A stretch of 63,987 nucleotides of DNA, counting the filler, from Octopus bimaculoides (lineage: Eukaryota), in assembly GCF_001194135.2 (NCBI RefSeq). It is 6 parts of 6 records of this genome, joined end to end, with 100 filler letters (N's around TTAATTAATTAA, not from the genome) between each part and the next. Parts side by side here need not be neighbours in the genome. Positions count along the whole stretch, not along the records: positions 1 to 27,990 come from NC_068994.1; 5 more parts are not named here. One strand, 5' to 3'. Shown one piece after another: positions 9,121 to 9,652 of this stretch. The position numbers and the translations under genes are program-made. Numbering within the stretch: position 1 is the stretch's first letter; the number at the start of each line of letters is the position of its first letter. The notes below the pieces were generated by a model, which had not been told where the DNA came from, made no database searches, and saw only the letters and a program-made list of their open reading frames with translations.

Positions 9121-9652
9121 TTATCCCCACTTAAGCATGGACACTCTGTTAGAACAAGCTATACTGCAATAGATACTATGAGAGATACTCTCACATTGGC
9201 TTTTGGTGCCAAATGCACTCTTGTTTATATCACCAGCCTGGAGATAAATCCCTGCCACCTCTAGCACCAAAACCACCAGATCACTTGATTTCGACCTTCC
9301 TTGGTCTCATCAGTGATGGATGCTTGACTGCTAAAGATAGCAGCAACTCACATCCCTGCCAATGATAGTGCCAGAACAGGCACCAGTGTTGTGATTAGCC
9401 AGTGAACTTGTTAAAAAATATATATATTAGTGACAGAAGCAGTTTTAATACTGAGAGGTAATATTTATCCCCACTTAAACGTGGATGATCTGTTAAAACA
9501 ATCTATACTGCAGTAGAGACCGTGAGAGAAATTCTCATACTGGCTTTTTGGTGGAAAATGCACTCTTGTTTATATTGCTAACAGGGAGATAAATCCCTGC
9601 CACAACCAGCACCGAGACCACCAAATCATGTGATTTTGACCTTCCTTGGTCT
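9121..9652 (-). mobile_element. Retrozyme-like tandem unit, ~345-nt period, about 1.5 copies, each junction carrying a hammerhead
   Basis: 9121-9306 and 9465-9651 are diverged direct repeats offset by 344-345 nt; the second copy keeps stem II (GACC-AAGGAA-GGTC) and TGGTGG but lacks CTGATGA and has AAAA for GAAA. Confidence 0.65.
9273..9319 (-). ncRNA. Type I hammerhead ribozyme, structurally complete, in a DCTN1 intron (sense to the gene)
   Basis: Minus strand reads CCATCA-CTGATGA-GACC-AAGGAA-GGTC-GAAA-TC-AAGT-GA-TC^-TGGTGG: full core, G10.1-C11.1, 4-bp stem II, 6-bp stem I (one G-U), short stem III, AUC cleavage triplet. Confidence 0.85.

What the first reader, a model, noticed from the sequence alone, without database searches (positions are those of the whole stretch)
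9273..9329. Complete type I hammerhead ribozyme in a DCTN1 intron, sense to the pre-mRNA
Seen: the minus strand has every invariant core base (CUGAUGA, GAAA, UH), a G10.1-C11.1 4-bp stem II with loop AAGGAA, a 6-bp stem I (CCAUCA/UGGUGG) and a short stem III. Predicted cleavage is AUC^, between 9279 and 9278. Stem I can extend through an asymmetric bulge (U opposite UUUUGG) into AGCA/UGCU. Established: natural type I hammerheads use a loop II to stem I bulge contact to cleave at low Mg2+, and intronic hammerheads are known in amniote genes such as RECK. Inference: this copy could cut the DCTN1 pre-mRNA co-transcriptionally in the long intron after the 10094 exon, affecting splicing or output. 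I do not know of it being described in cephalopods.
Basis: partly seen in the sequence, partly recalled or inferred. Interest (0 to 1): 0.9.

Follow-up and report, generated by a model that had tools for sequence, protein, structure and literature searches.

The report
Hammerhead ribozyme from a repeat element
A sequence-complete self-cleaving hammerhead RNA motif does sit in sense in the dynactin (DCTN1) gene, but it is part of a duplicated 345-base repeat of the kind that carries such ribozymes around animal genomes, so it is most likely a transposon relic and not a device built for this gene.

Summary
Minus strand 9324..9263 has every invariant hammerhead core base, three compatible helices and a cleavage site after C9279. 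It is the only such motif in the window. None of 1000 shuffles gave even a relaxed one. Rfam gives a full-length but sub-threshold match to the intronic HH9 family (29.1 bits; gathering score 52).

DCTN1 on the minus strand is confirmed by four collinear exons upstream. No downstream exon was found, so "intron" is inferred.

The ribozyme lies in a 188-nt direct repeat (9652..9465 and 9307..9121, 82% identical, period 345 nt). That makes 1.54 tandem units. The upstream copy is cut off inside the ribozyme and carries G12-to-A. Unit size, 41% GC, tandem layout and a strongly self-paired unit RNA (z -3.9) fit the published metazoan hammerhead retroelements (non-LTR retrozymes).

Folding predicts a competing rod-like hairpin, 11.6 kcal/mol more stable, that sequesters C3-U7 and helix III.

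I found no other copies, because no cephalopod genome was reachable. Verdict: new member of a known kind; a role in regulating DCTN1 is unsupported.

The parts
9263..9324 (-). Complete type I hammerhead motif: distal and proximal stem I, CUGAUGA, stem II with loop AAGGAA, GAAA, 3-bp helix III, C17 at 9279, predicted cut between 9279 and 9278
   Evidence: Read directly. Only descriptor hit in the window, 0/1000 shuffles. Rfam HH9 29.1 bits, full-length alignment.
9121..9307 (-). Downstream copy of the 188-nt direct repeat. It starts inside the hammerhead at stem II and ends at ...AAGTGGGGATAA.
   Evidence: blastn self-comparison: 82.4% identity over 188 nt, E 8e-50. MAFFT alignment.
9465..9652 (-). 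Upstream copy of the repeat. It carries a dead hammerhead remnant: no stem I 5' strand, no CUGAUGA, GUCAAAA (G12 to A), and U at position 17 (9624).
9308..9464 (-). Part of the unit present once. It holds a short (TA)n run and, at its 3' end, the stem I 5' strand and the CUGAUGA box of the complete ribozyme.
   Evidence: Together with 9307..9121 it makes one full 345-nt unit (9465..9121).
9279..9623 (-). Notional 345-nt monomer between the two position-17 sites. It is a strongly self-paired RNA.
   Evidence: MFE -104.3 kcal/mol, z -3.92, 0/100 shuffles as stable. A flanking 345 nt of the same strand gives z +0.39.
10094..10196 (-). DCTN1 exon (IQNILLDCGINIVRV...), AG acceptor and GTAAGT donor. 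It is the last recognisable exon before the element.
   Evidence: Collinear weak tblastn match to human DCTN1 residues 821-847. Sequence read.
11064..11129 (-). DCTN1 exon IRRRLPQNDGNSTASPLMCPKE
   Evidence: Read. It matches IRRRMPGTDAPG... of DCTN1 chain 9b7j_s and of P0001. By eye, collinear.
11649..11732 (-). DCTN1 exon PGEEKSEFSILLRDLETCNNDTRMCAKK
   Evidence: tblastn to human residues 772-802, 48% identity, E 2e-4. phmmer against PDB dynactin subunit 1.
11863..11994 (-). DCTN1 exon QLYSVHLVNEKVNCTHLMADQVKLALSSCDSIQVDITRLKMLLQ
   Evidence: tblastn to human residues 726-772, E 1e-7. The four spliced exons hit Pfam Dynactin PF12455 at 34.4 bits, cutoff 25.6.

Best explanation
The motif is a genuine hammerhead that arrived as cargo of a small non-coding repeat element, about 345 nt per unit. 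The element is now present as a 5'-truncated copy directly followed by a full copy (1.54 units, 9652..9121), inserted in sense orientation downstream of DCTN1 exon 10196..10094. In elements of this kind (metazoan non-LTR retrozymes, probably mobilised by Penelope-like retrotransposons), tandem hammerheads cut a multimeric transcript into unit-length RNAs. These RNAs are ligated into circles and reverse-transcribed back into the genome. At this locus the system is broken. The upstream ribozyme has lost its 5' half and its G12, and the two copies have diverged by 18%. Only one ribozyme remains sequence-complete, so no unit-length RNA can be released in the normal way. The surviving ribozyme can at most cut the DCTN1 primary transcript once, after C9279. 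Folding predicts that it mostly sits in an inactive rod-like hairpin, so cleavage is expected to be slow or partial. Slow intronic hammerhead cleavage is known not to block splicing, so the insertion can be tolerated without having a host function. Shown: the motif, the repeat architecture, the gene and the strand, the self-paired unit, and the competing fold in silico. Inferred: retroelement origin, low activity, and lack of host function.
For: Motif complete and non-random. 188-nt direct repeat at 82% identity, E 8e-50, period 345 nt, with the upstream copy truncated inside the ribozyme and carrying G12A. Unit size 345 nt, GC 41%, no ORF and no RT nearby. Unit RNA z -3.92 against +0.39 for flanking sequence. 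These match the published definition: type I hammerheads in short tandem repeats of about 300 bp, dimers to multimers, GC below 45%, giving highly self-paired 170-400 nt RNAs (PMC7229834; PMC7761336). Amniote intronic hammerheads are themselves described as similar to retroelement hammerheads (PMC6155905), which explains the HH9 hit. Catalytic fold -14.0 against MFE -25.6 kcal/mol, with helices I and III at pair probability near 0. The Rfam HH9 consensus, used as a calibrator, keeps stem I near 1.0 and helix III at 0.35-0.42. A slow hammerhead in an intron does not stop splicing, whereas a fast ribozyme does (PMC2995048).
Against: Only two copies were seen, both at this locus. No further copy turned up in any collection I could reach, but none of them holds a cephalopod genome, so the multi-copy nature is untested. 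There is no target-site duplication. Tandem Repeats Finder does not call the 345-nt period. A local tandem duplication of intron sequence would give the same picture. The energy model ignores the tertiary contacts and non-canonical core pairs that stabilise active hammerheads, so low activity is a prediction only. Keeping all core bases and all helices over roughly 9% divergence per copy is mildly unlikely under pure drift (my rough estimate is about 0.05-0.1).
Confidence: 0.65

Rival explanations
1. Exapted regulatory ribozyme. The hammerhead, whatever its origin, is kept by selection because co-transcriptional cleavage of the DCTN1 pre-mRNA tunes splicing or output, as proposed for HH9 in RECK.
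For: The motif is in sense orientation in the transcription unit. The best Rfam match is the intronic HH9 family, over the full model length. All core bases and helices are intact while the sister copy has decayed. The RECK hammerhead is active in vitro and in cells (PMC10761166).
Against: No conservation data could be obtained. The score is 23 bits below the HH9 gathering score. The 5' half of the HH9 internal loop, which takes part in the tertiary contact, is missing. A much more stable alternative fold sequesters the core. Sense orientation has a 50% prior. Even for HH9 the function is still described as unknown or proposed (PMC6155905).
Confidence: 0.1
2. Fragment of the pseudo-LTR of an autonomous Penelope-like element and not a retrozyme. 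Penelope-like elements insert as a 5'-truncated copy followed by a full copy, and they carry hammerheads in the repeated ends.
For: The layout here, a 5'-truncated copy abutting a full unit, is the partial-tandem arrangement described for these elements (PMC8557442). The helix III region AUCA-AG-UGAU is a near-palindrome able to form an extended intermolecular helix III (duplex -5.8 kcal/mol; double hammerhead -34.6 against 2 x -14.0 for two single hammerheads), as in dimer-acting hammerheads. A (TG)n run lies 60 nt beyond the 3' end, and these elements favour microsatellite targets.
Against: No RT or GIY-YIG reading frame was seen: no long ORF next to the element, and a PDB sequence search of the unmasked minus-strand translations of 13395..1 gave only dynactin. 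Pfam was run on only two window peptides, so the window was not screened for RT. The full unit is only 345 nt. Hammerheads of these elements are described as minimal variants lacking helix III (PMC7761336; PMC6155905), whereas this one has a 3-bp helix III and an 11-bp two-part stem I.
Confidence: 0.15
3. No mobile element at all. A chance or ancient hammerhead-like sequence was caught in a local 345-bp tandem duplication of intron DNA.
For: Only this locus carries the repeat. There is no TSD and no poly(A).
Against: 0/1000 shuffles produce even a relaxed hammerhead. The unit is far more self-paired than its flanks, which a random piece of intron would not be. Type I hammerheads in animals are reported to be overwhelmingly repeat-borne.
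Confidence: 0.07

Closest known systems
Metazoan non-LTR retrozymes (Cervera and de la Pena 2020, PMC7229834)
   Same: Type I hammerhead. Non-coding unit of a few hundred nt (345 here). Head-to-tail arrangement. GC 41%. No LTR, PBS or PPT. Highly self-paired unit RNA. Ribozyme embedded in a stable rod or branched fold.
   Different: Only 1.54 units with a single intact ribozyme. Copy number, expression and circularity are unknown. The stem I internal loop is one-sided. The organism group (cephalopods) is not among those analysed in that work.
Hammerhead_HH9 (Rfam RF02275), the intronic hammerhead of amniote RECK and other genes
   Same: Type I. 6-bp proximal stem I plus a distal stem. 4-bp stem II starting G10.1-C11.1 with a 6-nt A-rich loop. 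3-bp helix III. Intronic and sense to the host gene.
   Different: 29.1 bits against a gathering score of 52. The 5' half of the stem I internal loop is absent. It is embedded in a recognisable repeat. No evidence of orthologous conservation. The catalytic fold is much less favoured in silico than for the HH9 consensus.
Sm-alpha SINE of Schistosoma and newt satellite 2 hammerheads
   Same: Hammerhead inside a non-coding repeat of about 330 nt. Short helix III. Possible dimeric (double-hammerhead) mode through a near-palindromic helix III region.
   Different: No sequence similarity was tested or found. Dimeric action cannot happen at this locus because the partner copy lacks its catalytic half.
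Minimal hammerheads of Penelope-like elements
   Same: Partial-tandem insertion architecture. Type I topology.
   Different: Those lack helix III and loop-loop contacts and flank an RT/GIY-YIG ORF. Here helix III exists and no such ORF was seen nearby.

Membership tests
Hammerhead ribozyme (type I) | Invariant core C3 U4 G5 A6 N7 G8 A9 / G12 A13 A14 / A15.1-U16.1 / H17 | tested here: met
   CUGAUGA 9313..9307, GAA 9292..9290, A9289-U9280, C9279; descriptor hit
Hammerhead ribozyme (type I) | Three helices around the core, open end at helix I | tested here: met
   Stem I 6 bp (one U-G) plus a 5-bp distal stem, stem II 4 bp, helix III 3 bp closed by AAGU
Hammerhead ribozyme (type I) | Self-cleavage after H17 | not testable with these tools
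   Needs a transcription and cleavage assay. In silico, the catalytic fold is 11.6 kcal/mol above the MFE.
Hammerhead ribozyme (type I) | Loop 1 to loop 2 tertiary contact that gives activity at low Mg2+ | tested here: inconclusive
   A 6-nt A/G-rich loop II and a 5-nt bulge on the 3' strand of stem I exist. The 5' half of the HH9-type internal loop is deleted in the Rfam alignment.
Rfam Hammerhead_HH9 (RF02275) | Score at or above the curated gathering threshold (52 bits) | tested here: not met
   29.1 bits; nothing at gathering thresholds
Rfam Hammerhead_HH9 (RF02275) | Conserved at orthologous intronic positions across species | not testable with these tools
   No cephalopod genome was reachable. 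The protein database returned only one short related fragment, P0002.
Metazoan non-LTR retrozyme | Type I hammerhead inside short head-to-tail repeats of about 150-450 bp | tested here: met
   Period 345 nt, 1.54 units, 82% identity, E 8e-50. This is the minimal case: less than a full dimer. TRF does not call it.
Metazoan non-LTR retrozyme | Low GC, non-coding, no LTR/PBS/PPT | tested here: met
   GC 41%; stops in all frames of the unit; no tRNA-like part
Metazoan non-LTR retrozyme | Unit RNA highly self-paired | tested here: met
   z -3.92 against flank +0.39
Metazoan non-LTR retrozyme | Many genomic copies; expressed as linear and circular unit-length RNA | not testable with these tools
   Searches for other copies found none, but the collections hold no cephalopod genome
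Penelope-like element | RT plus GIY-YIG ORF between pseudo-LTRs | tested here: inconclusive
   No long ORF next to the element, and a PDB sequence search of unmasked minus-strand translations of 13395..1 returned only dynactin. No Pfam or RT-specific scan of the window's translations was run; the Pfam call covered only the mariner-like segment and the spliced DCTN1 peptide.
DCTN1 (dynactin p150) host gene | Collinear exons matching the Dynactin domain on the same strand as the ribozyme | tested here: met
   Pfam PF12455 34.4 bits, above the 25.6 cutoff; PDB dynactin subunit 1 E 6.7e-4; tblastn E 1e-7 and 2e-4

The most novel reading that the evidence does not exclude
The surviving hammerhead is active in vivo and has been retained in the orthologous DCTN1 intron of several octopus species. 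That would make it an invertebrate counterpart of the amniote HH9 exaptation. A variant reading: its catalytic half also pairs with the upstream pseudo-substrate (UGAU-U-UGGUGG, cut after U9624), so that a 345-nt intron-derived RNA is released and circularised.
Probability: 0.07. Interest if true: 0.6.

Novelty: new member of a known kind. Interest (0 to 1): 0.32.

Why it matters
If the unit proves to be a multi-copy family, it would extend hammerhead-bearing retroelements (retrozymes) to cephalopods. So far the only mention I found for that group is a bulk Rfam count in the giant squid genome paper. It would also give a clean natural example of a sequence-complete ribozyme lying in sense inside an essential motor-complex gene. 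That is useful for asking how much intronic self-cleavage a gene tolerates. On present evidence it is an ordinary transposon relic. The main value of this check is to attach the correct context to a striking motif.

Tried and rejected
1. Rfam at gathering thresholds found no family.
2. I translated the repeat and searched 5.8 billion proteins for ORFs from other copies. There was no hit.
3. The same ORF against 1.84 billion representatives gave two hits, P0003 and P0004. P0003 looks like a repetitive adhesin-like protein and P0004 like a multi-repeat hydrogenase-like protein. Both were judged by eye from their sequences only. Their scores are inflated by internal repeats and they are unrelated.
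4. The exon read-through ORF gave no hit. The spliced exons gave only P0001 (42% identical to the query, near-identical to the mammalian DCTN1 chain, so probably vertebrate DNA in a metagenome) and P0002 (a 989-nt contig with an 84% identical exon B). Neither gives a route to orthologous introns.
5. A JGI metagenome scan with two conserved blocks of the repeat body gave 0 hits.
6. A scan with CTGATGAGACCNNNNNNGGTCGAAA gave more than 120 loci. None has loop AAGGAA, stem I CCATCA or any body similarity, so they are unrelated hammerheads.
7. A full-text search for the ribozyme sequence in papers gave nothing.
8. A target-site duplication search found nothing longer than 5 nt.
9. A tRNA scan for a SINE head found nothing.
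10. The exon peptide alone against PDB gave nothing. Pooling the unmasked minus-strand translations was needed to detect DCTN1.
12. I rejected the LTR-type (plant-like) retrozyme reading, because the repeat boundary falls inside the ribozyme. A complete LTR would not show that.

Full report
OBSERVATION. On the minus strand the window reads AGCAU-CCAUCA-CUGAUGA-GACC-AAGGAA-GGUC-GAAA-UC-AAGU-GAU-C^UGGUGG-UUUUG-GUGCU, from 9324 to 9263. Every invariant hammerhead position is present:
- C3 to A9 at 9313..9307.
- G12 A13 A14 at 9292..9290.
- The A15.1-U16.1 pair, 9289 with 9280.
- C17 at 9279.

Stem I has 6 bp (one U-G) and can continue as a 5-bp distal stem across a one-sided 5-nt bulge. Stem II has 4 bp starting G10.1-C11.1, with a 6-nt loop. 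Helix III has 3 bp closed by AAGU. The open end is at helix I, so this is a type I hammerhead.

A descriptor scan that I wrote finds this single site on either strand. None of 1000 dinucleotide-preserving shuffles gives even a relaxed hammerhead. Rfam at gathering thresholds reports nothing. With E-value reporting, the best family is Hammerhead_HH9, aligned over the whole model at 29.1 bits against a gathering score of 52. The E-value is 1.6e-5 for the local stretch and 0.0015 for the window. The other sub-threshold Rfam hits in the window are microsatellite artefacts.

GENE AND STRAND. I pooled the unmasked minus-strand translations and searched PDB sequences. The hit was dynactin subunit 1, E 6.7e-4, through two adjacent segments. 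I recalled the human C-terminal sequence, verified it against PDB chain 9b7j_s, and ran tblastn against the window:
- Residues 726-772 map to 12003..11863 (E 1e-7).
- Residues 772-802 map to 11735..11643 (E 2e-4).
- Residues 821-847 map weakly to 10199..10119.

Reading the DNA gives four collinear exons with AG/GT borders: 11994..11863, 11732..11649, 11129..11064 (IRRRLPQ...) and 10196..10094. Spliced together they pass the Pfam Dynactin cutoff, 34.4 bits against 25.6. DCTN1 is therefore on the minus strand, and the ribozyme is sense to it, 765 nt past the GTAAGT donor at 10093.

No DCTN1 exon is recognisable at lower coordinates. The human protein continues for about 420 residues, and the window contains assembly gaps. 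So "intron" is a sound inference but is not demonstrated here.

The ribozyme lies in a direct repeat. Minus-strand 9652..9465 and 9307..9121 are 82.4% identical over 188 nt (E 8e-50), with a period of 345 nt. The upstream copy begins inside stem II. It has no stem I 5' strand and no CUGAUGA box. It reads GUCAAAA where the complete copy reads GUCGAAA (G12 to A), and it has U at position 17. The 157 nt between the copies (9464..9308) ends with the 5' half of the complete ribozyme.

The simplest description is a 5'-truncated unit directly followed by a full 345-nt unit, 1.54 units in all. The unit has these properties:
- GC content of 41%.
- Stop codons in every frame.
- No tRNA-like part.
- No neighbouring long reading frame.
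- A fold far better than shuffled controls: -104.3 kcal/mol, z -3.92, 0/100 shuffles as stable.

An equal length of flanking sequence gives z +0.39.

These features match the published class of metazoan non-LTR retrozymes. That class is defined by type I hammerheads in head-to-tail repeats of about 150-450 bp, from dimers to long arrays, with low GC, no LTR/PBS/PPT, and expression as highly self-paired 170-400 nt linear and circular RNAs (PMC7229834; PMC7761336). The partial-tandem layout is also typical of Penelope-like elements, the proposed mobilisers (PMC8557442). The HH9 resemblance is expected, because amniote intronic hammerheads are described as close to retroelement hammerheads (PMC6155905).

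ACTIVITY. The nearest-neighbour model gives the catalytic fold -14.0 kcal/mol and the minimum-energy fold -25.6 kcal/mol for the 74-nt region. Helices I and III have pair probabilities near zero. The competing structure extends stem II into a rod:
- GAU (G5-U7) pairs with AUC, the 5' strand of helix III.
- UCACU (end of stem I plus C3 and U4) pairs with AGUGA.
- CCA pairs with UGG in a shifted register.

The same fold persists in 200-nt and 345-nt contexts. Its strands are transcribed before the 3' strand of stem I, so it should also win kinetically; that is my inference. As a calibrator I used the Rfam HH9 consensus. It also has an MFE below its catalytic fold (-26.3 against -20.8), but it keeps stem I at about 1.0 and helix III at 0.35-0.42 probability.

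The helix III region AUCA-AG-UGAU is a near-palindrome, and a double hammerhead of two copies is more stable per copy than a single one (-34.6 against 2 x -14.0). This recalls the dimer-acting newt and axolotl ribozymes. At this locus, however, the partner copy lacks its catalytic half. It is met in silico only, because the model ignores tertiary contacts. The 5' half of the HH9-type stem I internal loop is absent here, so the assumed loop-loop contact is unproven.

CONSEQUENCE FOR THE HOST. Published work shows that a slow hammerhead placed in an intron does not prevent splicing, whereas a fast ribozyme does (PMC2995048). A weak ribozyme in a long DCTN1 intron is therefore tolerable and needs no function to persist. 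My rough estimate is that keeping all core bases and helices over about 9% divergence per copy has a probability of about 0.05-0.1 under drift. That is mildly suggestive and not evidence of selection.

SEARCH FOR RELATIVES. None was found. The collections plainly lack cephalopod genomes: the DCTN1 exons themselves found only a vertebrate-like contaminant and one 989-nt fragment. The multi-copy status of the unit is therefore the main untested point. A local duplication or a Penelope-like pseudo-LTR fragment remain possible alternatives.

NOVELTY. Hammerheads in cephalopods have been counted in bulk: 235 Hammerhead_1 loci in the giant squid genome paper (PMC6962438). I found no description of this sequence or of cephalopod retrozymes.

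VERDICT. The motif is real. The gene and strand are correct. The element is most likely a decayed hammerhead-bearing repeat, a new member of a known kind. A regulatory role in DCTN1 is unsupported.

Noticed in passing
window 6021..6320 (-): Fragment of a mariner/Mos1-type transposase N-terminus (Pfam HTH_48, 32.2 bits against a cutoff of 24.1), next to an assembly gap at 6460..7083.
   Followed up: partly
window, e.g. 86-273, 3021-3190, 19190-19489, 22209-22384, 23158-23412, 26344-26820; also 7084-7312, 15783-16185, 17382-17789, 23899-24023: Several families of interspersed short repeats, in both orientations, at 75-93% identity. They cover about 30% of the window (8472 bases masked by self-blastn). 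They are SINE-like, and ARAGORN finds no intact tRNA part.
   Followed up: no
window 4309-4345, 6460-7083, 8504-8539, 14314-14466, 23415-23898, 24762-25681: Runs of N (assembly gaps), mostly flanked by TA/TG microsatellites. A missing DCTN1 exon downstream of the ribozyme could hide in one of them.
   Followed up: no
window 9038..9058: A (TG)n/(AC)n microsatellite about 60 nt beyond the 3' end of the repeat element, and a short (TA)n run inside the unit near 9430..9410. Penelope-like elements are reported to favour microsatellite targets.
   Followed up: no
L002, L003, L007, L008, L013, L014 and about 15 more (ENA OFE* contigs): A family of type I hammerheads in metagenome contigs: GCTACACCGTG-CTGATGAG-ACC-CAACAA-GGT-CGAAA-CAGCTG-TC-CACGGT. 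Helix III is only a palindromic CAGCTG, like the minimal dimer-acting hammerheads of Penelope-like elements. Probably eukaryotic DNA in marine samples.
   Followed up: no
L018 (11-35 and 4748-4772), L098 (9-33 and 4703-4727), L069 (62-86 and 1077-1101), L120 (684-708 and 965-989): Metagenome contigs with two identical hammerheads 281 to 4737 nt apart. In L018 and L098 one copy is at the very end of the contig, which suggests terminal redundancy of circular or tandem hammerhead-bearing replicons.
   Followed up: no
P0002 (ENA contig, 989 nt): A read-through ORF containing QPGQEQSEFSILLRDLETCNTDTRMCARKVR, 84% identical to DCTN1 exon 11732..11649. Probably DNA of a related cephalopod in a public metagenome assembly.
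   Followed up: partly
window 10029..9980 (-): Just after the 10094 donor there is a second polypyrimidine-AG site. It is followed by a short frame (NSTGGHCQVHPSSFET, then stop) if joined to exon 10196..10094. This could be an alternative terminal exon. If it were used, the ribozyme would lie in a 3' UTR or downstream region and not in an intron.
   Followed up: no
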